64,000 nt of DNA, taken from the IMG/VR virus record IMGVR_UViG_3300022200_000019, positions 62,001-126,000 of that record. The stretch is one strand, 5' to 3'. Below are positions 5,669 through 17,240 of the stretch, piece by piece. A model generated the notes under the pieces. That model did not search any database. It was not told where the DNA came from and worked only from the letters and a program-made list of their open reading frames with translations. The number at the start of each line of letters is the position of its first letter. The first letter of the stretch is position 1. The position numbers were made by a program, and so were the translations under genes.

Positions 5669-6787
5669 ATGATTCGTAAAGTAATCGACAGAGAAACAGC
5701 ACACTTGTGGATGCGTGAGAATTTACGCTTTAGTCGTTATGATATTAACTTCGTAGAAAATGTTGCTCGTTTCATTAATGACAACCGCCCGCTTACTGTT
5801 AAACAGAACGATTTATGGGAAAAGATTGTTCATAAGTATCGTAAGCAGATTTATAACGAAAGTCAGAACACACTCACAGATGAAGATATCCTAGCCAAGC
5901 AGTGGCGCCAAGGCCCTGTAGAGTTTGATCCTAGTTACGCTCCGTTGTTGTGGATCGAAGATGATGTTATTAAACTTCGTTTTCCGTTTAACAAAGACGC
6001 AGTCGCTGACTTGCGTACAGTAATTCAAGATGCTGGTCACGATTATGGATTAATGATGTCTTCTGTACATCATGAGTATATTCACTGGGATAGAGACGAA
6101 CGTGTATGGCGTGGTACCGCGTATCCTACCTTAATTCGAGACTTGTACTATTATTCTAAAGATCATAATTTTACTATAGATAAATCAGTTCAAGACATAG
6201 TAGATAGCATTCCTGGAGATGAGTTTGATTGGCGCCCATACGCTGAGTTATATGGTGACAGCTATATGATTAGTAATTTAAGTCCTGGATTATTAAAAGC
6301 ATTGCCACCTAATGAGATTACTCTCAACGCCGTTAGAGATCTTGTCGGATTAGAAGTTACATTAAGTGATACACTACAAAGTTATGTGGCACAGAAATAT
6401 GGATACCATATTGGACGAATTGCTTGTCAACGCGAAGTACGCATTGATATGAACGATATCAAATTGGTCAAACAGTGGCTTAGAGAAACAGATAACGATA
6501 TCTTTGTTGTACATAAGCAGTATGCTGATTATGCTGAAAATTTTAAATTAGAACAACAAACACTTGTTCCTGAAAAGTTTGTGAGTTTAGCAGACTTCAG
6601 AAACACCGCTGGCGGCATTGGTGATTATCATGTGTTTAGCAAAGATGGCGACAACTATACATTAGATAACGGTGTTGATTGTGTAGTTTATATGCCCGGA
6701 ACAGCGTTTAATTACGAAGCACTTGCACACATTGCTAAAAAGGTTATTACAGTAGTAGAAGATGAAACAAGCACGATTAATAATTAA
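5669..6787 (+). CDS. Hypothetical protein upstream of the helicase
   Basis: Long ORF overlapping the next gene; in-frame ATG 5669 directly after the -10 box. Confidence 0.6.
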   Translation: MIRKVIDRETAHLWMRENLRFSRYDINFVENVARFINDNRPLTVKQNDLWEKIVHKYRKQIYNESQNTLTDEDILAKQWRQGPVEFDPSYAPLLWIEDDVIKLRFPFNKDAVADLRTVIQDAGHDYGLMMSSVHHEYIHWDRDERVWRGTAYPTLIRDLYYYSKDHNFTIDKSVQDIVDSIPGDEFDWRPYAELYGDSYMISNLSPGLLKALPPNEITLNAVRDLVGLEVTLSDTLQSYVAQKYGYHIGRIACQREVRIDMNDIKLVKQWLRETDNDIFVVHKQYADYAENFKLEQQTLVPEKFVSLADFRNTAGGIGDYHVFSKDGDNYTLDNGVDCVVYMPGTAFNYEALAHIAKKVITVVEDETSTINN

Positions 6788-8222
6788 AGACGAAGTGAAC
6801 GTCAAGATCGAAGGGTTGGAACTTTCAACCCGGCAAAAACTTGTAAACAAGTTCAAGTACGTTGTGCCACACGCACGTTATTTGCCAGCAGTTCGTCTTG
6901 GTCGGTGGGATGGTAAAGTAGCATTCTTCCAACTTGGTGGCAGCACATATGTTAACTTGTTGCCAGACATTGTTCCTATCTTAGCAGAATATAATTATGA
7001 TGTTGTAGTCGATGATCAACGTGATTATCGTACAGCGTTTGAGTTTGAACGTGTAGAAAAAGGTAGCTATTCGCACATTACTTGGCCTAAAGGTCATCCT
7101 GCTGAAGGACAGCCTGTTGAAATGCGTGATTACCAAATTGAAGTAGTTAATAACTTTCTGGAGAATCCACAGTCGCTACAAGAGATTGCTACAGGTGCCG
7201 GTAAAACCATCATGACAGCATCTCTGAGTCAGCGTGTTGAACAGTATGGACGATCGATTGTTATTGTACCTAACAAAAGTTTGGTAACGCAAACCGAAAA
7301 GGATTACATCAACATGCAATTAGACGTTGGCGTGTTTTATGGCGATCGTAAAGAGTTTGGTAAGACACATACTATTTGTACCTGGCAATCACTTAACTCG
7401 CTATTAAAAGCAACACGCAATCAGCAAGCGCCTATTACTATTGGCGAGTTTTTAGAAGATGTTGTTTGTGTTATTGTGGACGAAGTTCATCAGGCAAAAG
7501 CAGACGCACTTAAAACTCTACTTACAGGCCCAATGGCAAAGATTCCACTACGATGGGGTCTAACAGGAACCATTCCCAAAGAGGAGTTTGAGTTTCAGGC
7601 ACTTCATGTAAGTATCGGACCAGTGATTCACAGAATTGCTGCTACTGAATTACAAGAAAAAGGGGTGCTTGCTAATTGCCACGTTAATATTGTGCAGCTA
7701 CAAGATCATGCAGAGCATGCTAACTATCAAGCAGAACTTAAATTCTTGTTAAGCGATCAAGACAGATTAAATGTTATCGCACAAATGATTGAAGGTATTA
7801 ACGAGTCGGGTAATACACTTGTTCTGGTTGATCGTGTTAGTGCAGGCAATGATTTGGTGGAACGATTGGGTGATCGAGCAGTATTTGTGAGCGGTGCCAC
7901 AAAAGCAAAAGACAGACAAGATCATTATGATGAAGTTTCAGAAGCCGACAATAAAATTATTGTTGCAACGTATGGTGTTGCTGCCGTTGGCATTAATATT
8001 CCTCGTATTTTCAATCTTGTTCTTGTTGAGCCTGGCAAGTCTTTTGTTCGTGTTATTCAATCCATTGGCCGTGGCATACGAAAAGCACAAGATAAGGACC
8101 ATGTCCAGATATGGGACATAACGTCGACATGTAAGTTTGCTAAACGACATTTAACCAAGCGTAAAGCGTTTTATAAAGAAGCAAACTATCCGTTTACACA
8201 AGAAAAGTATGAGTGGAAATAG
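6762..8222 (+). CDS. uvsW: SF2 DNA helicase, T4 UvsW-like
   Basis: RDYQ Q-motif, ATGAGKT, DEVH, GLTGT, QSIGRG; N-terminal WDGK as in UvsW. Confidence 0.85.
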   Translation: MKQARLIIKDEVNVKIEGLELSTRQKLVNKFKYVVPHARYLPAVRLGRWDGKVAFFQLGGSTYVNLLPDIVPILAEYNYDVVVDDQRDYRTAFEFERVEKGSYSHITWPKGHPAEGQPVEMRDYQIEVVNNFLENPQSLQEIATGAGKTIMTASLSQRVEQYGRSIVIVPNKSLVTQTEKDYINMQLDVGVFYGDRKEFGKTHTICTWQSLNSLLKATRNQQAPITIGEFLEDVVCVIVDEVHQAKADALKTLLTGPMAKIPLRWGLTGTIPKEEFEFQALHVSIGPVIHRIAATELQEKGVLANCHVNIVQLQDHAEHANYQAELKFLLSDQDRLNVIAQMIEGINESGNTLVLVDRVSAGNDLVERLGDRAVFVSGATKAKDRQDHYDEVSEADNKIIVATYGVAAVGINIPRIFNLVLVEPGKSFVRVIQSIGRGIRKAQDKDHVQIWDITSTCKFAKRHLTKRKAFYKEANYPFTQEKYEWK

Positions 8223-9201: not shown

Positions 9202-9631
9202 ACTAGACATTTTTAAAATGCTTGCGGCAATGGATCGCAAGGATTATGATTTTTATGATAATCTAAGTGACGAAGAACGTAAAGGATTCAGTGCCTTTCT
9301 TGCGTTAAAATGGGGAGCCAGTGTAGAAGGTTCACGTGAAATTCAGCACTATTATCTAGCAGCAGCAAATCATTATTGTAACAAACATTGGTTTGAAATT
9401 AGCAGACATCCAAAATTACAATGGTTAGAACTTTGCGCAGCAAGTCCAGGCATCGGTCCACAAAGACATAAGTGGCTTGAAATGCAAAAGAAAGATAAAA
9501 AAGCCAACGAGCACGTTAAAAAGTTGACTAATTTATTTCCTAATGTTAAACTAAACGATATTGAAGTATTGTCTAAACTTGTTACTAAACGCGAAGTAGA
9601 TGACTACATTAAGCAGCACGGAACAGACTGA
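9188..9631 (+). CDS. T4 gp62-like clamp-loader small subunit (tentative)
   Basis: Pattern F..F...KW.....N......HPKLQW......RHKW resembles the gp62 family; replication context. Confidence 0.45.
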   Translation: MAAPKLDIFKMLAAMDRKDYDFYDNLSDEERKGFSAFLALKWGASVEGSREIQHYYLAAANHYCNKHWFEISRHPKLQWLELCAASPGIGPQRHKWLEMQKKDKKANEHVKKLTNLFPNVKLNDIEVLSKLVTKREVDDYIKQHGTD

Positions 9632-10304
9632 AACATATATCTGCCGATATTGTGAACGCGAGTTTAAACGCGAAAGCAGTCTTGCAGTACATGTCTGCGA
9701 GCAAAAAAAGCGGTTTCAAGAAAAAAACGAGCGTGGCGTGCAAATTGGATATCAAGCATATCTAAAGTTTTTTGAATATACACAAGGCTCAGCAAAGCTA
9801 AAAACATTTGACGATTTTGCTAGTAGTCCATACTATCGAGCGTTTGTTAAATTTGGACGCTATTGTGTATCTATTGGCGCTATTGATGTACCAAAATTTA
9901 TTGAGTATGTAGTTAAAAACAATAAAAAACTAGATCACTGGGCAAAAGATAGTATCTATCAAGAATACCTAATGAATTTGTTAGTAACTGAACGTGCTGA
10001 TCGTGCGCTAGTGCGAGCAATGGAATATAGTATTGCTTGGGGCGAAGAAAACAATGCTAATCCACAAGATGTAATTCGTTTTAATAACCCAAACCGTGTG
10101 TGTCAACTTGTTACAAAAGGTACACTTAGTCCTTGGGTAATATATAATTCATCTAGTGGAATGGACTTCTTGGGTAAACTAAACGAAGAACAACAAAAAA
10201 TTATCTGGGAATACATTTATCCAGAAACCTGGGAACGTATTTTTAGCAAATATATTGCCGATCAAGAATATGTAAAAGAAATGTTACGGCAGGCGGGATG
10301 GTAA
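9600..10304 (+). CDS. Zinc-finger protein
   Basis: YICRYCEREFKRESSLAVHVC C2H2/C2HC finger at the N-terminus. Confidence 0.6.
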   Translation: MTTLSSTEQTETYICRYCEREFKRESSLAVHVCEQKKRFQEKNERGVQIGYQAYLKFFEYTQGSAKLKTFDDFASSPYYRAFVKFGRYCVSIGAIDVPKFIEYVVKNNKKLDHWAKDSIYQEYLMNLLVTERADRALVRAMEYSIAWGEENNANPQDVIRFNNPNRVCQLVTKGTLSPWVIYNSSSGMDFLGKLNEEQQKIIWEYIYPETWERIFSKYIADQEYVKEMLRQAGW

Positions 10305-11441
10305 GTGAAGATAAATGTAAATGTAGTATCCGCTGATATATCAGTGCAAATAATTGACGCCTTTTATGCATATATACAATCAGGGCTCAATGAGCGCATA
10401 GCAGATTGGGACATTGATATTACGAATACACATAATGATGCAGCAGACGTTAATATTATATGGGCCAACAAAGATACAACCGTTAATATTAATGCAAATT
10501 ATTACGACATCGTAGTTATATCAAACGCAGGAGAACCAGTTACTGTATCGTCGTCTCTTATTCATAATATCTGGCAAAACAACAATGTATTTTTGGTATT
10601 TAATAGCCTACTTACACAAGATCATTCTTTATACAATAAAGTAATACCTTTTCTCGATGCCGCTCAACAATGTCGAGATTACTGGACTAGATATTTCTAT
10701 CCCCATTATCATATAGCTAACAAACTTAAAAAAATTCAGCGCAGTAAAGATTTAATTGCTATTAATGGTTTAAATAGAACAGTTAGACACTATTTTTTTA
10801 AATTGCTCAATGAAAAAACTAATATAAAAATATTAAAAAATATTTCTACTGATATCGTTAACACCAATCATTCTTATTGGGAGACCAAGGAGGATTTTGA
10901 ATTTCGTAATTATTTAGAAGAACAATATTCCAATGTCTTTGAACCAGAACCGGATTACAAGTATTACGATAACGCTAAACATATAGGTATTAATAATAAG
11001 TTTGGCAAAATTAATCCTGGATATGAATTATTACCAGAATATTTTGAATATAGGTGTATAATTTTTCCAGAGTCTTCATGGCAAAATAACGAGCTAGCAT
11101 TGACCGAAAAAGCACTTAAATGTTTTTATGCAGGATCTCTGCCATTTCCTATTGCCGGGGCAAATGTTAATTCATTATATAATAGCTTAGGTTTTGCAAC
11201 GGCGTGGAATTTGTTGCCTAAATATTTGCAATGTTTTGATAGCGAACAAGACCATTTTAAACGGATCGAACAACAAATTAACGCTTTAAAATGGTTTGAA
11301 GATAACGCTATGGTATTTCAAACAGCACAATATACTGAACTAACTAGACAAAATATGATTAATATGCTAACATATTCGCCGATAGAGTTTGGCATTCAAA
11401 AATTAATTAGGATTATTGATGAGCGCAGACGTAGACATTGA
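10305..11441 (+). CDS. GT10 (fucosyltransferase)-like glycosyltransferase, paralog 1
   Basis: IFPES...LTEKALKCFYAGSLPFPIAG...GF, shared with the 17237 and 47305 ORFs. Confidence 0.45.
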   Translation: MKINVNVVSADISVQIIDAFYAYIQSGLNERIADWDIDITNTHNDAADVNIIWANKDTTVNINANYYDIVVISNAGEPVTVSSSLIHNIWQNNNVFLVFNSLLTQDHSLYNKVIPFLDAAQQCRDYWTRYFYPHYHIANKLKKIQRSKDLIAINGLNRTVRHYFFKLLNEKTNIKILKNISTDIVNTNHSYWETKEDFEFRNYLEEQYSNVFEPEPDYKYYDNAKHIGINNKFGKINPGYELLPEYFEYRCIIFPESSWQNNELALTEKALKCFYAGSLPFPIAGANVNSLYNSLGFATAWNLLPKYLQCFDSEQDHFKRIEQQINALKWFEDNAMVFQTAQYTELTRQNMINMLTYSPIEFGIQKLIRIIDERRRRH

Positions 11442-11970
11442 CTTTGGTAACAGAGATGAAGTACTTAAACTTATCAAGCATGTTCCTGCACGACAACAAG
11501 ACCGCAAGCACAACTCTGGTGTATATGTAACACCAATCCCAACTGATCCTGTACATAATTGCGCAAGTATTGATTATAAGAAGGCAGAAGAGTTAGGTTA
11601 TTTCAAAATTGATTTTCTTAATGTTCACGTTTACGAACACATTAAAGATCAAGCACATTATGATCAGTTATTGGGTACAGAACCACCTTGGCACAGATTA
11701 CACGAACGAGAATTTGTAGAAAAGATTATACACATTAATAATTATGCTAATGTGTTGAAGCAATTAGATGTAAACACCATTCCAAGACTGGCAATGTTCC
11801 TAGCGATGATTCGTCCGGGTAAGAAACATTTAATTGGTAAGCCTTGGGCAGAAGTAGCAGAAACTATTTGGGATAAAACAGATGAAGGCTACACGTTCAA
11901 AAAATCGCATGCGGTTAGCTATGCGCATCTTGTAGCCTTACATATGAATAGTATAAATGAGAAATTTTAA
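11419..11970 (+). CDS. Miniaturised DNA polymerase III alpha (DnaE)-like protein
   Basis: DVDIDF, HNSGV, GYFKIDFL, IRPG, GYTFKKSHAVSYA in DnaE order within 183 aa. Confidence 0.75.
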   Translation: MSADVDIDFGNRDEVLKLIKHVPARQQDRKHNSGVYVTPIPTDPVHNCASIDYKKAEELGYFKIDFLNVHVYEHIKDQAHYDQLLGTEPPWHRLHEREFVEKIIHINNYANVLKQLDVNTIPRLAMFLAMIRPGKKHLIGKPWAEVAETIWDKTDEGYTFKKSHAVSYAHLVALHMNSINEKF

Positions 11971-12751
11971 CACTATTATTTTATATTTTTTGCCTTATTC
12001 TGGAGGAAATTTCTTAGGTTCATGCTTGCTACTTGACAACGAATGCATGTTACATAATTCAACTTTAATTGAGCTCGATTATACTGGAAAATTAGAATAT
12101 TTAAATAATCAACTTGACTTGGCTCTAGAGTATAGGCATTGGAATGATTTTAATCTAGGAAATGGGCAGCTTGGTATAGATTTTGATAAGTTTCTTAATA
12201 GTAATTTACCAGGCGGATACGCAAAAAACATAGTGCCGGTGTATCCTAAAAAAACTTGCGCGAGTATTCATAATTATGTGGAGTTAATGGTGTGTAAAAC
12301 GTTATATCCACATAACCAAGTTTTATTGTTTACTAATGCGGAAAATATAATTACCTCTCGCAACAAAATATCTTACAAATATCAATATAATACTAAGCTG
12401 TATTCTTATTGGCAAACTATTCGTGATTCTCAATGGCCTGACACTCCTCCGCATACACTTGATGAGTTTGAATTGCTACCAGAGCGTATTCGTACGGAAT
12501 TAATTGAGTGTTTTAATTCCGAAATTTTAAGATATTTAAATTATACCAAAGAGTTTTTAACCGAATGGAACTCGCAACCAGCAGATTTTAAAATTGATGT
12601 TAATTATATGTATTCGTCATTTGAGAATTTTTTTAATGTTTACACAGATGTTTGCAAATACTTGAATCTAGAAATTGCCAACAAAGACGATTTATCACTA
12701 TTATTCAATAAGTGGAAAAAGACCATCACTCAACTCGCCGAACAAGCGTAA
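11957..12751 (+). CDS. Hypothetical protein, possibly sulfotransferase-like
   Basis: N-terminal YFLPYSGGNFL PAPS-loop-like motif; AT-rich. Confidence 0.35.
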   Translation: MRNFNTIILYFLPYSGGNFLGSCLLLDNECMLHNSTLIELDYTGKLEYLNNQLDLALEYRHWNDFNLGNGQLGIDFDKFLNSNLPGGYAKNIVPVYPKKTCASIHNYVELMVCKTLYPHNQVLLFTNAENIITSRNKISYKYQYNTKLYSYWQTIRDSQWPDTPPHTLDEFELLPERIRTELIECFNSEILRYLNYTKEFLTEWNSQPADFKIDVNYMYSSFENFFNVYTDVCKYLNLEIANKDDLSLLFNKWKKTITQLAEQA

Positions 12752-13103
12752 TTGATTTACGCTTTTTACGATTCTTTGTTAAATCTGACAGACTTGTAAC
12801 TTGTCCTGAAATAACTTCTAAGTTTTTATTATTGAAGGTTTTTAAGTAAGGTTTAAAAATTTCCCAGTCGCTTTTTAAGAAGATGTTAATAGGGATAGTG
12901 TGATTACTTTCCCACCACCAAATCTCACCTAGTTCTAAGAACATTCTTTTTAGTTCTTCTTCAAGTATACTACCAAAATCATACATGGTAGTAACACTAG
13001 CGTCTTGGTTTAGTATGATACCAACGTGCTCATTTTCTGCATACCGAACTATCGACAAGAACGGGTATCTGTCTGTGATTTTATCAAATAGCTCAGTATC
13101 CAT
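12726..13103 (-). CDS. Hypothetical phage protein
   Basis: Clean ORF with WWWESN motif, divergent from 13124. Confidence 0.6.
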   Translation of the reverse strand: MDTELFDKITDRYPFLSIVRYAENEHVGIILNQDASVTTMYDFGSILEEELKRMFLELGEIWWWESNHTIPINIFLKSDWEIFKPYLKTFNNKNLEVISGQVTSLSDLTKNRKKRKSITLVRRVE

Positions 13104-14239: not shown

Positions 14240-14887
14240 ATGATTCGCAATATTGCCGCGTTTGGCGACAGTTGGATTCATGGTGATGAAATTGTACACC
14301 CAGATCCTAATGCCACCGAAAAAGAAAAACGTTTATACCGAGAAGAAAACTGTACTGTAGGACAGTTAGGAAAACTTCTTGGCGTAACTGTTGAAAATTA
14401 TGGTGTGAGTGGAAATAGCCTACAAGGTACAGTTTGGGAATTTTATCATTGGCTTAATGATGAACATAGACACACAGATGCTTCTCCGCAAGAAACACTA
14501 GTAGTAATAGGTTTAACAGAAGCAAGCCGCAATAGTTGGTGGAATTCGAATAATTTTGTACACAATCATATAATGCACGATCGCCATCCTTGGAATTCGT
14601 TTGTAAAACATCATTATATGTATAACGAAGACGAAACTGTTGAATGTATGCGTTATTGGGAAACCACTGAATTCTTTTATAATTGGTGTAATACAAATGC
14701 GGTTAAATTGTTAATGGTTAATGTATTTCCGCCGCCGTATTTGTCCAATTTAGTCACGAATCCGAGTTGGAATATGCGAGGCGAGGTATCTGGCGATATG
14801 CTTGCTCCGGGCAAACACGCAAATGAATCTGGATCAACACATTTAGCTAAACACTTGCAAATGTATGCAAAATCCATTATAATATAA
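14240..14887 (+). CDS. SGNH/GDSL hydrolase-like protein
   Basis: AFGDSW, NYGVSGNS, C-terminal KHANESG. Confidence 0.6.
   Translation: MIRNIAAFGDSWIHGDEIVHPDPNATEKEKRLYREENCTVGQLGKLLGVTVENYGVSGNSLQGTVWEFYHWLNDEHRHTDASPQETLVVIGLTEASRNSWWNSNNFVHNHIMHDRHPWNSFVKHHYMYNEDETVECMRYWETTEFFYNWCNTNAVKLLMVNVFPPPYLSNLVTNPSWNMRGEVSGDMLAPGKHANESGSTHLAKHLQMYAKSIII
14855..14883 (+). promoter_or_regulatory. Sigma70-type promoter for primase-helicase (leaderless)
   Basis: TTGCAA-17-TATAAT, GTG start 6 nt downstream. Confidence 0.6.
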
Positions 14888-14889
14888 CG

Positions 14890-15855
14890 GTGTTAAATGT
14901 ACTATCTTACATCAACGGAAAACGAAAAACCAACAGTTCCGGCTGGACTAGTTTTGATGCTCCGTGTTGCGTGCATAATGGAGAAACTGCCGACCGCAAA
15001 CAGCGCGGTGGCTTCAAATTCTCAAGCGATACAGATTGGAGCTATCACTGTTTCAACTGTGGCTATACTGCTAGTTTTACTCTCGGGTATCCAGTAAGTC
15101 ACAAAGCACACCGACTATTATCATGGATGGGTGTTCCAGATATTGAAATACACCGTTTAACACTCGATAGTTTAAAACACAAAAACATTAAGCAATTAAT
15201 TCGTGAACGACAACAAGAAGAAATACGAATTAGCTTTCCAGAAGTTGAACTACCAAAAACCGCACGACTAATTGACGACAACGACACACCTCTTTTAGAA
15301 TATTTGCGTGATAGAAGTATCGATCCATGGGCATATCCGTACATGACAGATATAGAACAAACACGCCCGGGTATTCTTATACCGTATACATACGATAACA
15401 CAGTTGTCGGTTGGACTACGAGATTTTTAGATGATCGAAAACCAAAATATCTAAACAATTGCTCTGCCGCAGGCTATGTGTTTGGAACAGATTTACAACA
15501 CGACGATTGGCAGATTGCTATTGCTGTTGAAGGCCAGTTTGACGCATTAAGTATAGATGGTGTTGCAATTACAACAAACAGAATTAGCGATACACAAGCA
15601 GCCGTATTAAGACGACTTAATAGAGAAATTGTAGTTGTGCCAGATCAGGATCGTGCAGGATTAGAACTCGTAAACGACGCAGTTAAATATGGCTTTAGTG
15701 TTAGTATCCCAGACTGGGACGCAGATGTAAAGGATGTTAATGACGCAGTAAAGCGTTACGGCAAATTGGCCACATTAATAAGTATTATTGAGAACAAGAA
15801 TTCAAGCAAGATCAAAATTGAGCTAGCACGAAAAGCTCTCGAACGGAAATTATGA
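14890..15855 (+). CDS. DNA primase (T4 gp61/DnaG-like)
   Basis: Zinc ribbon PCC..H...YHCFNCG; TOPRIM VEGQFDA, PDQD, KDVND. Confidence 0.85.
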   Translation: MLNVLSYINGKRKTNSSGWTSFDAPCCVHNGETADRKQRGGFKFSSDTDWSYHCFNCGYTASFTLGYPVSHKAHRLLSWMGVPDIEIHRLTLDSLKHKNIKQLIRERQQEEIRISFPEVELPKTARLIDDNDTPLLEYLRDRSIDPWAYPYMTDIEQTRPGILIPYTYDNTVVGWTTRFLDDRKPKYLNNCSAAGYVFGTDLQHDDWQIAIAVEGQFDALSIDGVAITTNRISDTQAAVLRRLNREIVVVPDQDRAGLELVNDAVKYGFSVSIPDWDADVKDVNDAVKRYGKLATLISIIENKNSSKIKIELARKALERKL

Positions 15856-17240
15856 AAGAATACACAGTAGACATACAAAAATTATTTCTAGAAATGATGC
15901 TGGCAGATGCACAAAGTTATGTGCGTGTGCAGAACATCTATAACGTAGATAACTTTGACCCAGGTTTACGTGAAGCAGCAACATTCATTAAAGAGCATAG
16001 TGACAAATACAAGACTATGCCAGAACTGGAACAACTTAATGCTGCGGTAGGAGCAAAACTAAAACCAATTCCGCCTGAAATGAAGGATGGACACTATGAT
16101 TGGTTTATGGACGAGTTTGAAAAGTTTACCAAGCGTCAAGAACTTGAGCGTGCTATTCTTAAAAGCGCAGATATGCTTGAAAAAGGTAACTTTGATCCAG
16201 TTGAAAAACTAATCAAAGACGCAGTACAGATTTCCTTACACAAAGACATGGGCACAGATTACTTTGATGATCCACGCACACGTCTAATGAATATTAAGTC
16301 CAATAATGGACAGGTTAGTACAGGCTGGCTTAACTTAGATCGTGCATTATATGGTGGATTTAACAGAGGTGAACTACAGATTTTTGCAGGTGGTTCGGGT
16401 TCGGGTAAATCCTTGTTTATGCAGAATTTAAGTGTAAACTGGGTAACTGCTGGACTCAATGGTGTGTATATTTCGCTAGAACTTTCTGAAGATTTATGCT
16501 CAATGCGTATTGACTCGATGATGACAAATACATCTAGCAAAGAAGTGTTTAAGGACATCGACAACGTCGAAATGAAAGTTAAGATGATGCAGAAGAAATC
16601 CGGTAAATTCCGTATTAAGTATATGCCAGCACAGAGTACAGTAAATGACATTCGCAGTTATATTAAAGAATTACAAATTCAAACTGGTGTTACTGTAGAC
16701 TTTTTGTGTATTGACTACCTGGACTTGTTAATGCCGGTAAGTGCTAAAGTTAGCCCAAGTGACTTGTTCGTTAAGGACAAGTATGTATCAGAAGAAATTC
16801 GTAACTTAGCAAAAGAATTAAATGTTATTATGGTAACTGCATCGCAGCTTAACCGATCTGCGGTAGAAGAAATCGAGTTCGATCACTCACACATTTCAGG
16901 TGGTATTTCAAAGATTAACACAGCAGACAACGTGTTTGGCATTTTTACAAGTAGAGCAATGCGTGAACGTGGACGCTATCAAATACAGTTAATGAAAACA
17001 CGTTCAAGTTCAGGAGTAGGCTCAAAGGTAGACTTGGAGTTTGATATTAATACGTTACGTATTTCAGATTGCGAACAATCTGAAGACAGCGCCATTCCGG
17101 GCACTGGCGGATTTAGTATGAGTAATATTAAGCCTGTTAGCAAAATGTCTAACACAGACGAAACACCTAAAGTGCAAGGCAATGTTGAAAGCGCAATGCT
17201 TAACAACTTGCTAAACAAGATGAAGAGCACTGGACAATGA
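15852..17240 (+). CDS. Replicative DnaB-like helicase (T4 gp41-like)
   Basis: GGSGSGKS, SLELSE, IDYLDL, TASQLNR, KTR. Confidence 0.9.
   Translation: MKEYTVDIQKLFLEMMLADAQSYVRVQNIYNVDNFDPGLREAATFIKEHSDKYKTMPELEQLNAAVGAKLKPIPPEMKDGHYDWFMDEFEKFTKRQELERAILKSADMLEKGNFDPVEKLIKDAVQISLHKDMGTDYFDDPRTRLMNIKSNNGQVSTGWLNLDRALYGGFNRGELQIFAGGSGSGKSLFMQNLSVNWVTAGLNGVYISLELSEDLCSMRIDSMMTNTSSKEVFKDIDNVEMKVKMMQKKSGKFRIKYMPAQSTVNDIRSYIKELQIQTGVTVDFLCIDYLDLLMPVSAKVSPSDLFVKDKYVSEEIRNLAKELNVIMVTASQLNRSAVEEIEFDHSHISGGISKINTADNVFGIFTSRAMRERGRYQIQLMKTRSSSGVGSKVDLEFDINTLRISDCEQSEDSAIPGTGGFSMSNIKPVSKMSNTDETPKVQGNVESAMLNNLLNKMKSTGQ

What the first reader, a model, noticed from the sequence alone, without database searches (positions are those of the whole stretch)
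11419..11970. 183-aa minimal family C polymerase: all DnaE catalytic motifs, almost nothing else
Seen: DVDIDF, HNSGV, GYFKIDFL, IRPG and GYTFKKSHAVSYA in order. Known: these correspond to E. coli DnaE PDFDVDF (D401/D403), HAGGV, KFDFL (D555), RPG and GYGFNKSH, spread over about 360 aa of a protein longer than 1100 aa. Here the thumb-sized segment is only about 20 aa, and the PHP, clamp-binding and OB domains are missing. The ORF is clean, so the deletions are internal rather than a simple fragment. Inference: a repurposed nucleotidyltransferase or primer/repair enzyme, or the catalytic core of a multi-subunit polymerase, perhaps with the nearby zinc-finger and gp62-like proteins.
Basis: partly seen in the sequence, partly recalled or inferred. 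Interest (0 to 1): 0.72.

Follow-up and report, generated by a model that had tools for sequence, protein, structure and literature searches.

The report
Half of a split mini-DnaE polymerase
The 183-aa ORF is the C-terminal, metal-binding half of a stripped-down DNA polymerase III alpha that jumbo phages encode as two separate small proteins; this is real and conserved, but it was already described from sequence analysis in 2021 and has not been tested biochemically.

Summary
The model of the ORF aligns to DnaE residues 399-779 (Z 8-9.2), and the thumb and most of the fingers are deleted.

It does not hold all the catalytic motifs. The NTP-binding GRGS loop (E. coli R362-S364) lies on a separate 161-aa protein encoded 71.5 kb away, outside the window at G000:C1:145485-145970. 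That protein ends where this ORF begins in DnaE numbering. The RRAMGKK finger motif has no counterpart in either protein.

Four lines of evidence link the two halves:
- Each half hits 96 phage records, with near-identical genus tallies.
- They are predicted to bind each other (ipSAE 0.90, best control 0.09).
- Three rare natural fusions of 375-376 aa exist.
- The C-half is under strong purifying selection (dN/dS 0.05), and its catalytic Asp residues are 96-99% conserved.

The genome also encodes a family B polymerase. This is the "split minimal DNA polymerase III alpha" of group 2.2 jumbo phages described by Iyer et al. 2021, so it is a new member of a known kind. Whether it has polymerase activity, and what it does in infection, is untested.

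The parts
11419..11970 (+). C-terminal half of the split minimal Pol III alpha (183 aa). It carries the DxDxD metal-binding strand (D4, D6, D8), H31, K63/D65, RPG132-134 and the KSH finger motif (162-164). The thumb is deleted and the fingers are trimmed.
   Evidence: phrog_11778 E 3.5e-57. AF2 model pLDDT 88. Foldseek and VIA-align match DnaE 399-779. hhalign to E. coli DnaE. Conservation and dN/dS. Its partner, the N-half, lies outside the window at G000:C1:145485-145970 (L003:1237-1722), which would be window position 83485-83970.
9600..10304 (+). Conserved upstream neighbour: a 234-aa protein with an N-terminal CxxC...H zinc-finger-like motif (phrog_11058, function unknown). It is context only and is not shown to belong to the enzyme.
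   Evidence: phrog_11058 E 1.7e-56. Weak zf-C2H2 match. Directly upstream of the C-half in the close relative L008 and in phage Paride (35% identity). About 1.1 kb upstream in phage Phosso (33% identity).
12726..13103 (-). Conserved small ORF on the opposite strand downstream of the C-half gene (phrog_11637, function unknown). It serves as a synteny marker.
   Evidence: phrog_11637 E 5e-33. An ORF in the same position and orientation occurs in Phosso, Paride and L008. The one next to the natural fusion gene in L007 hits the same PHROG.
6762..8222 (+). SF2 DNA helicase, at the upstream end of the replication-gene block that contains the C-half.
   Evidence: phrog_16 E 9.5e-73. A helicase gene sits in the same relative position in Paride, Phosso and L008.
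14890..15855 (+). DnaG-type DNA primase, about 3 kb downstream of the C-half.
   Evidence: phrog_47 E 4.6e-36. The same arrangement occurs in Paride and Phosso.
15852..17240 (+). DnaB-like replicative helicase.
   Evidence: phrog_19 E 3.4e-70. DnaB_C Pfam hit in the L008 homolog.

Best explanation
Window 11419-11970 encodes the C-terminal subunit of a two-protein, stripped-down family C (Pol III alpha/DnaE-type) nucleotidyltransferase typical of Rak2/PA5oct/Atu_ph07-like ('group 2.2') jumbo phages.

Shown:
- This subunit supplies the three catalytic carboxylates (D4, D6, D65), the conserved K63, and a shortened finger region (RPG, KSH).
- A second 161-aa protein, encoded 71.5 kb away beside MazG, a GroES-like gene and (in relatives) the clamp loader, supplies the preceding palm helices and the GRGS nucleotide-binding loop. 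It ends at E. coli position 392.
- The C-half's first catalytic Asp (D4) is E. coli D401, so the break falls within E. coli 393-400, inside the Pol-beta-like palm.

Inferred:
- The palm can only be completed by non-covalent association of the two proteins, making them an obligate heterodimer.
- The heterodimer is catalytically active. Because it has no thumb, PHP, OB or clamp-binding parts, it would be a short-patch, poorly processive DNA polymerase.
- It would work alongside the phage's family B replicase, for example in gap filling, primer extension or repair at the fork.

The activity and the biological role are not shown.
For: Homology to DnaE:
- for the C-half.
- Sub-threshold DNA_pol3_finger matches fall inside the C-half genes of Phosso and CBB.
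- The N-half scores above the Pfam cut-off for PF07733 (33.2 bits against 23.9). hhalign places it on E. coli 348-392, including GRGS and ERFL.

The two halves are complementary parts of one fold. The natural fusion P0392 (376 aa) hits phrog_11127 (N-half family) at aa 8-180 and phrog_11778 (C-half family) at aa 190-375. A single colinear match to the full-length DnaE profile phrog_405 runs across the junction, aa 102-207 against profile 358-462.

Association. Complex prediction gave ipSAE 0.90 in three runs, best of 3 controls 0.09. That mark was reached by 58 of 80 solved complexes and 2 of 110 mismatched pairs. The interface includes the N-half GRGS loop (122-135) and C-terminus (158-161), and the C-half N-terminus (1-10).

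Co-occurrence. Each half hits 96 phage records, with near-identical genus tallies. The C-half is present once in each of the four genomes searched.

Selection. dN 0.047, dS 0.90, ratio 0.05 against a 92%-identical relative. D4 and D6 are kept in 96%, D65 in 99% and K63 in 100% of 90 sequences (the query plus 89 representatives of 50%-identity clusters); median length is 195 aa.

Replication context. The C-half sits between a helicase and primase/DnaB. The N-half sits near MazG, a GroES-like gene and the clamp loader.

Main replicase. An 893-aa family B polymerase is encoded at G000:C1 about 193-195 kb.

Published description. Iyer et al. 2021, PMC7824862, describe the same split.
Against: - No biochemical data exist for any member in the literature searched.
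- The thumb is missing, as is about 90 aa of fingers including the RRAMGKK motif, which by established knowledge of DnaE structures helps hold the incoming dNTP. Templated synthesis may therefore be weak or need extra factors.
- The complex prediction may partly reflect the model's memory of intact DnaE structures. It shows likeness to a split DnaE, not measured binding.
- An AF2 model of the natural fusion was of low confidence (pLDDT 62, palm region under 50) because the alignment was shallow. I therefore have no reliable single model of the reconstituted palm.
- Sequence-only searches of the C-half against Pfam and PDB sequences find no DnaE.
- The genome record is only about 61% complete.
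Confidence: 0.8

Rival explanations
1. One reading: a stand-alone 183-aa minimal family C polymerase that carries every catalytic motif and acts on its own.
For: The three carboxylates, K63 and the KSH finger motif are all in this ORF and are conserved. The ORF folds confidently on its own, with pLDDT 88.
Against: The ORF starts 3 residues before the DxD strand. It lacks the GS nucleotide-binding loop and the palm helices before it, which lie on a separate protein that ends at E. coli 392. That protein co-occurs with the C-half in the same phages, is predicted to bind it and is fused to it in three natural clusters.
Confidence: 0.04
2. The heterodimer is an active Pol-beta-fold nucleotidyltransferase but not a templated DNA polymerase. 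It could be, for example, a terminal transferase, a primer-tailing or DNA-end-modifying enzyme, or a maker of a nucleotide second messenger.
For: The thumb is lost, along with about 90 aa of fingers including RRAMGKK, and no clamp-binding, OB or PHP parts are present. A complete family B replicase is already present.
Against: The retained finger segment (RPG, GYxFKKSH) is the DNA- and dNTP-facing part of DnaE by homology, and it is highly conserved. Both genes sit in replication modules. No defence or signalling genes were noticed next to them.
Confidence: 0.12
3. Decaying remnants of a horizontally acquired bacterial dnaE: non-functional fragments.
For: There are two short ORFs matching different parts of DnaE, large internal deletions and no Pfam hit for the C-half.
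Against: dN/dS is 0.05. Active-site residues are nearly invariant across 90 sequences from separate 50%-identity clusters. Both halves are retained in phages as distant as Pseudomonas, Agrobacterium, Vibrio and enterobacterial jumbo phages.
Confidence: 0.01
4. The two halves are joined covalently by split-intein trans-splicing, as in cyanobacterial DnaE, or at the RNA level.
For: Split dnaE genes joined by split inteins are known in cyanobacteria (established knowledge; papers listed).
Against: The N-half ends at the position of E. coli L392 plus one residue. The C-half begins 3 residues before the first catalytic Asp. There is no room for the roughly 100-aa N-intein and 35-aa C-intein halves. 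The natural fusions have only an 11-aa linker. Contigs from four metagenome runs show no joints in the C-half region; these are DNA data only.
Confidence: 0.01

Closest known systems
Split minimal DNA polymerase III alpha of group 2.2 jumbo phages (Iyer, Anantharaman, Krishnan, Burroughs & Aravind 2021, Viruses 13:63, PMC7824862)
   Same: There are two stand-alone proteins encoded by distant genes: an N-terminal NTP-binding unit and a C-terminal Mg2+- and template-binding unit. No other Pol III domains are present, and the pair occurs together with a family B polymerase. It is found in Atu_ph07, Rak2 and PA5oct-type phages, which are exactly the phages hit here.
   Different: Nothing essential differs. 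This copy comes from an uncultivated freshwater phage and is 37-45% identical to the copies in cultured phages. Added here: rare natural fusions, a complex prediction with controls, selection statistics and conserved neighbourhoods. The paper's accession lists were not available to me, so identity with their families rests on matching description and phage range.
Bacterial DnaE (Pol III alpha), e.g. E. coli DnaE, PDB 2HNH/5FKV; Taq 2HPI/3E0D; M. tuberculosis DnaE1 5LEW
   Same: It has the Pol-beta-like palm with D401/D403/D555 equivalents, K553, the GRGS loop (in the partner protein), and the RPG and GYxFxKSH finger motifs. Structural alignment gives Z 8-9.2 over E. coli 399-779.
   Different: The palm is split into two polypeptides, with the break at about E. 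coli 393-400. The thumb (about 83 aa) is deleted, as are about 90 aa of fingers including RRAMGKK. No PHP domain is found, and nothing matches DnaE beyond about residue 779, where the beta-clamp-binding, HhH, OB and tau-binding regions lie. The two proteins total about 344 aa against 1160.
PolC of Firmicutes (PDB 9QPC/9QRL hits)
   Same: It shares the family C palm and fingers core. The alignment is weaker, at Z 5.1-5.7.
   Different: PolC has an inserted proofreading exonuclease, a permuted OB domain and the full thumb and fingers. None of these is present here.
Split-intein DnaE of cyanobacteria (Ssp/Npu DnaE)
   Same: It is a dnaE encoded as two distant genes.
   Different: In cyanobacteria the halves carry split inteins and are spliced into one full-length protein of about 1,200 aa, split at a different site. 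Here there are no intein sequences and the enzyme is drastically reduced. Association must be non-covalent.

Membership tests
Family C DNA polymerase catalytic core (Pol III alpha / DnaE) | Pol-beta-like palm with three catalytic carboxylates (E. coli D401, D403, D555) | tested here: met
   D4, D6 and D65 align by motif and by hhalign/structure. They are conserved in 96-99% of 90 diverse sequences.
Family C DNA polymerase catalytic core (Pol III alpha / DnaE) | GS nucleotide-binding loop (E. coli R362-G363-S364) in the same polypeptide | tested here: not met
   The loop is absent from the 183-aa ORF. It is present as invariant GRGS(S) in the separate 161-aa N-half at G000:C1:145485-145970. The feature is met only by the two-protein unit.
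Family C DNA polymerase catalytic core (Pol III alpha / DnaE) | Thumb domain between the DxD strand and the HAGG strand (E. coli about 433-510) | tested here: not met
   Only 22 residues lie between D8 and H31, against 105 in E. coli.
Family C DNA polymerase catalytic core (Pol III alpha / DnaE) | Complete fingers including the RRAMGKK motif and the KSH motif | tested here: inconclusive
   RPG and GYxFKKSH are present and conserved. The 111-aa E. coli stretch between them, which includes RRAMGKK 709-714, is replaced by 24 aa. Whether invariant K135 substitutes for it is unknown. DNA_pol3_finger matches are only sub-threshold.
Family C DNA polymerase catalytic core (Pol III alpha / DnaE) | N-terminal PHP domain | tested here: not met
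   There is no PF02811 match in the own record or in the full records of three relatives. The control rang in 14 of 14 genomes.
Family C DNA polymerase catalytic core (Pol III alpha / DnaE) | Beta-clamp-binding, HhH, OB and tau-binding C-terminal regions | tested here: not met
   The ORF ends at about E. coli 779. Full-length E. coli DnaE as a query finds only the N-half locus in the relatives' records. The C-terminal tail is not conserved among homologs. Dedicated OB or HhH models were not run.
Family C DNA polymerase catalytic core (Pol III alpha / DnaE) | Template-directed DNA polymerase activity | not testable with these tools
   This needs primer-extension assays with the co-purified halves.
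Split minimal Pol III alpha of group 2.2 jumbo phages (Iyer et al. 2021) | Two stand-alone proteins: an N-terminal NTP-binding unit and a C-terminal Mg2+/template-binding unit | tested here: met
   The break lies between E. coli 392 and 401.
Split minimal Pol III alpha of group 2.2 jumbo phages (Iyer et al. 2021) | The two genes are distantly located in the genome | tested here: met
   The genes are 71.5 kb apart here. They are about 44 kb apart in Paride, 34 kb in CBB and 224 kb in Phosso.
Split minimal Pol III alpha of group 2.2 jumbo phages (Iyer et al. 2021) | Accompanied by a family B DNA polymerase, with no other Pol III domains | tested here: met
   A PolB ORF of 893 aa is present. No PHP or finger Pfam hits were found.
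Split minimal Pol III alpha of group 2.2 jumbo phages (Iyer et al. 2021) | Carried by Rak2/PA5oct/Atu_ph07-type jumbo phages | tested here: met
   All listed full-length homologs in cultured phages lie in records of about 285-490 kb from these groups. The own record is 213 kb at an estimated 61% completeness.
Split minimal Pol III alpha of group 2.2 jumbo phages (Iyer et al. 2021) | The two proteins reconstitute one enzyme | tested here: inconclusive
   Supported by the complex prediction (0.90 against 0.09), by the natural fusions and by co-occurrence. No physical measurement has been made.

The most novel reading that the evidence does not exclude
The two-subunit minimal family C enzyme is a true second DNA polymerase of a very large, mostly uncultivated clade of jumbo phages. 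It would work with phage-specific accessory proteins that replace the missing thumb and clamp contacts; the conserved zinc-finger neighbour phrog_11058 is one candidate. It would also reflect a pre-fusion, ancestral state of family C polymerases rather than a reduction of a bacterial DnaE, as Iyer et al. speculated.
Probability: 0.15. Interest if true: 0.75.

Novelty: new member of a known kind. Interest (0 to 1): 0.35.

Why it matters
If the heterodimer is active, about 340 aa in two chains would be the smallest known family C polymerase core. That would define the minimum needed for catalysis by the bacterial-type replicase fold. It would also give jumbo phages a second polymerase beside their family B enzyme, with possible roles in lagging-strand synthesis, gap filling or repair.

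The family is very abundant in metagenomes: more than 7,900 clusters at 90% identity for each half (a capped count), and 381 clusters at 50% identity for the C-half. It has never been studied experimentally. For annotation, C-half genes are still often labelled 'hypothetical' or even 'membrane protein' in GenBank. They should be labelled as the C-terminal subunit of a split DnaE-like enzyme.

Tried and rejected
Searches that found nothing useful:
- Pfam found nothing for the C-half.
- phmmer and a 33-sequence profile against PDB sequences found no DnaE, only chance hits at E above 0.5.
- Megablast of the region against GenBank phages found nothing.
- Full-length E. coli DnaE as a query found nothing in the own genome and only the N-half locus in Paride and Phosso, because the sequences are too divergent.
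- The supplementary files of Iyer et al. are not held, so their accessions could not be cross-checked.
- Literature searches found no experimental follow-up.

I rebuilt the alignment without those rows as A3 and did not send them elsewhere.

The fused model did not work:
- Three attempts to align many N-halves and C-halves onto the natural fusion misplaced the N-halves.
- The one correct alignment (A7) had only 7 rows over the C-part.
- The resulting AF2 model of the fusion was poor (pLDDT 62), so I did not use it for fold search.

Explanations rejected: intein trans-splicing, because there is no room for intein halves, and pseudogene remnants, because dN/dS is 0.05.

Data limits: no RNA runs hold this sequence, so expression could not be checked.
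Full report
**1. The observation**

The ORF listing shows one clean ORF at 11416/11419-11970 on the + strand. The ATG at 11419 is the likely start, because close homologs begin MSAD.

I fetched the real E. coli dnaE gene and checked the numbering:
- DFDVDF is at 401-406.
- HAGGV is at 511-515.
- KFDFL is at 553-557.
- RPG is at 639-641.
- RRAMGK is at 709-714.
- GYGFNKSH is at 753-760.

The phage residues therefore correspond as follows: D4/D6/D8 = D401/D403/D405, H31 = H511, K63/D65 = K553/D555, R132-P-G = 639-641, and K162-S-H164 = K758-S-H760.

**2. Is it homology or chance?**

Sequence-only methods are weak for this ORF:
- Pfam finds nothing.
- PDB sequence searches find nothing relevant, either with the single sequence or with a 33-sequence profile.

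Other evidence supports homology:
- PHROGs places the whole protein in phrog_11778 'DNA polymerase' at E 3.5e-57. The full-length DnaE-type profile phrog_405 hits aa 145-171 at E 1.4e-7.
- hhalign of the family alignment against E. coli DnaE aligns aa 28-135 to 508-642, putting H31, K63/D65 and RPG on their E. coli counterparts. E is 0.0026; the probability is low because the template is a single sequence.
- An AlphaFold2 model built from 31 sequences has mean pLDDT 88.
- Foldseek's 14 best PDB hits are all Pol III alpha from Taq, M. tuberculosis and E. coli, with probabilities up to 0.99.
- VIA-align aligns model residues 1-183 to E. coli 399-779, Taq 460-836 and Mtb DnaE1 418-806 with Z 8.0-9.2. 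PolC scores Z 5.1-5.7, and the first unrelated fold scores only Z 3.2.
- AlphaFold DB clusters give the same picture.

There are 22 residues between D8 and H31, against 105 in E. coli.

**3.

A search of the window's own genome with PF07733 hit a different place, G000:C1:145749-145964. That genome is a 212,917-base virus record, estimated 61% complete, and the window is positions 62001-126000.

The ORF at that place (L003:1237-1722, 161 aa) has these properties:
- It scores above Pfam's curated cut-off (33.2 bits against 23.9).
- It carries an invariant WGVGRGSS motif and ends ...EFLR.
- hhalign places its last 45 residues on E. coli 348-392, that is GRGS 361-364 through ERFL 389-392.

The N-half therefore stops at E. 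coli 392, and the C-half, which is the finding, starts 3 residues before D401. The Pol-beta-like palm is cut in two between the helix after the GS nucleotide-binding loop and the DxD strand. The two pieces are encoded 71.5 kb apart.

The title claim 'all DnaE catalytic motifs' is therefore wrong. The NTP-binding loop is in trans. The RRAMGKK finger motif also has no counterpart, because only 24 residues lie between RPG and GYTF against 111 between RPG and GYGF in E. coli.

**4. Evidence that the two proteins are one enzyme**

(a) Co-occurrence. tblastn of each half against 50,697 phage records hits 96 records each, with near-identical genus tallies: Escherichia 34/34, Pseudomonas 11/11, Klebsiella 11/10, Erwinia 8/8, Salmonella 8/8, Xanthomonas 4/4, Yersinia 4/4 and Agrobacterium 2/2. 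The full-length matches lie in records of about 285-490 kb. The C-half occurs once per genome.

(b) Natural fusions. An exhaustive HMMER search found one 375-aa representative, P0288, with the C-half at aa 190-372. A length-restricted search found just three such clusters: P0288, P0391 and P0392. P0392 has the following matches:
- phrog_11127 (N-half family) at aa 8-180.
- phrog_11778 (C-half family) at aa 190-375.
- One colinear match to the DnaE profile phrog_405 running straight across the junction, aa 102-207 against profile 358-462.

The linker is about 11 aa. The fusion gene sits at the C-half locus, followed by the same reverse phrog_11637 ORF.

(c) Complex prediction. ipSAE was 0.90 in three runs, and the best of 3 controls was 0.09. 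That mark was reached by 58 of 80 solved complexes and 2 of 110 mismatched pairs. The interface includes the N-half GRGS loop and C-terminus and the C-half N-terminus. As the tool warns, this may partly reflect memory of intact DnaE. It shows that the pair looks like a split DnaE, not that binding has been measured.

**5. It is functional, not decaying**

- Against a 92%-identical relative (L008), dN = 0.047 and dS = 0.90, a ratio of 0.05.
- Among 90 full-length sequences (the query plus 89 representatives of 50%-identity clusters), D4 and D6 are kept in 96%, D8 in 93%, D65 in 99%, K63 in 100%, R132 and P133 in 96%, and H164 in 92%. Lengths are 170-219 aa, median 195.
- The family is very large. 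More than 7,900 clusters at 90% identity were found for each half, and both searches were capped. The C-half has 381 clusters at 50% identity.
- Only three loci turned up in 185,579 prokaryote species genomes. All three are in freshwater Bacteroidota MAGs and are probably binned phage contigs.
- The sequence comes from freshwater metagenomes. Contigs from four runs tile the region without mismatches or joints.

**6. Context**

The C-half lies in a conserved block, in this order:
- SF2 helicase (6762-8222).
- Small conserved ORFs.
- Zinc-finger-like protein phrog_11058 (9600-10304).
- The C-half.
- Reverse ORF phrog_11637 (12726-13103).
- Structural-like ORFs.
- Primase (14890-15855).
- DnaB (15852-17240).

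This block is seen here and in Paride, Phosso and the close relative L008.

The N-half lies near MazG and a GroES-like gene here. In Paride and CBB a clamp loader is annotated downstream of it; Phosso has MazG, GroES and an 'AAA-ATPase' in those positions.

The genome has an 893-aa family B polymerase. No PHP or DNA_pol3_finger Pfam match was found in the own record. In the full records of three relatives there is no PHP match and no other match to full-length DnaE, and the only finger-domain matches are sub-threshold, two of the three inside the C-half gene itself.

**7. Comparison with what is known**

Iyer et al. [quoted passage not shown] They report that it accompanies a family B polymerase, and they suggest it may cooperate in strand synthesis or repair.

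That is exactly what is found here, so this ORF is a new member of a known kind. I found no experimental work on it.

N-half genes have been annotated 'DNA polymerase III alpha subunit' for years, for example in GAP32 and CBB. C-half genes are still mostly labelled 'hypothetical' or even 'putative membrane protein'.

**8. Mechanism**

Shown:
- The ORF is homologous to DnaE, and its active-site residues are conserved.
- The two proteins cover adjoining, non-overlapping parts of DnaE, with the break inside the palm.
- They co-occur, and natural fusions exist.
- The C-half gene is under purifying selection.

Inferred:
- The two proteins form an obligate non-covalent heterodimer that completes the Pol-beta-like palm.
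- Catalysis uses two metal ions bound by D4, D6 and D65, with the dNTP triphosphate held by the GRGS loop of the partner protein.
- With no thumb and no clamp contact, processivity would be low, which suggests an accessory role in short-patch synthesis beside the family B replicase.

The main live rival is a non-templated nucleotidyltransferase activity. Stand-alone function, pseudogene remnants and intein splicing are effectively excluded (see the rival explanations).

**9. Verdict**

The finding is real and the motif reading is correct. The interpretation needs correcting: this is half of a split enzyme, and the partner is encoded far away. The system has been published, though only from computational analysis.

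Interest is moderate (0.35). It is biologically intriguing and experimentally open, but it is not new.

Noticed in passing
window 10305-11441 (+) and 11957-12751 (+): The 378-aa and 264-aa ORFs that flank the C-half gene are absent from the 92%-identical relative L008/L009. There the zinc-finger gene abuts the C-half and the reverse ORF follows directly. Neither ORF has a Pfam or PHROG hit. They look like recent lineage-specific insertions on both sides of the gene. Contigs from four runs confirm they are really there.
   Followed up: partly
window 11510-11950: In runs X5 and X6 the contig depth rises over the C-half gene. Loose ends occur at 11851 and 11950, at the 3' end of the gene. This fits co-occurring related strains that share the conserved gene but diverge where the 264-aa ORF is inserted.
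   Followed up: no
window 9600-10304 (+): A zinc-finger-like protein (phrog_11058, function unknown) is a conserved upstream neighbour of the C-half. It is 33-35% identical to its counterparts in Paride (adjacent) and Phosso (about 1.1 kb away). It could be an accessory factor of the mini-polymerase or a replication protein such as a helicase loader. This was not tested.
   Followed up: partly
L003:14-397, L003:2244-2654 (G000:C1 about 144.3-146.9 kb, outside the window): The N-half gene is flanked by a MazG-like pyrophosphatase and a GroES/Cpn10-like co-chaperonin. MazG and the N-half are also neighbours in Paride and Phosso, a GroES gene is annotated in Phosso, and a clamp loader follows in Paride and CBB.
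   Followed up: partly
L008:789-1949 and L008:10021-11127 (-): The close relative carries two radical SAM genes in this block. One of them lies just upstream of the primase gene. At that position the window has no such gene: 14240-14887 is followed directly by the primase at 14890.
   Followed up: no
P0350 (233 aa): One metagenomic protein joins the first 100 or so residues of a C-half to an unrelated C-terminal part that resembles a pseudouridine-synthase motif. It is probably a chimeric assembly or a disrupted gene.
   Followed up: no
P0404, P0405 (540-551 aa): These proteins carry PHP plus PF07733 domains and show weak similarity to the fused minimal enzyme (E 6e-6 and 9e-4). They may be truncated or intermediate DnaE forms and would be worth including in a phylogeny.
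   Followed up: no
L013, L014 (Haliscomenobacter sp. MAG), L015 (Lishizhenia sp. MAG): The only C-half homologs found in 185,579 prokaryote species genomes lie on contigs of freshwater Bacteroidota MAGs (52-57% identity). They are probably mis-binned jumbo-phage contigs, but they may hint at the host phylum.
   Followed up: no
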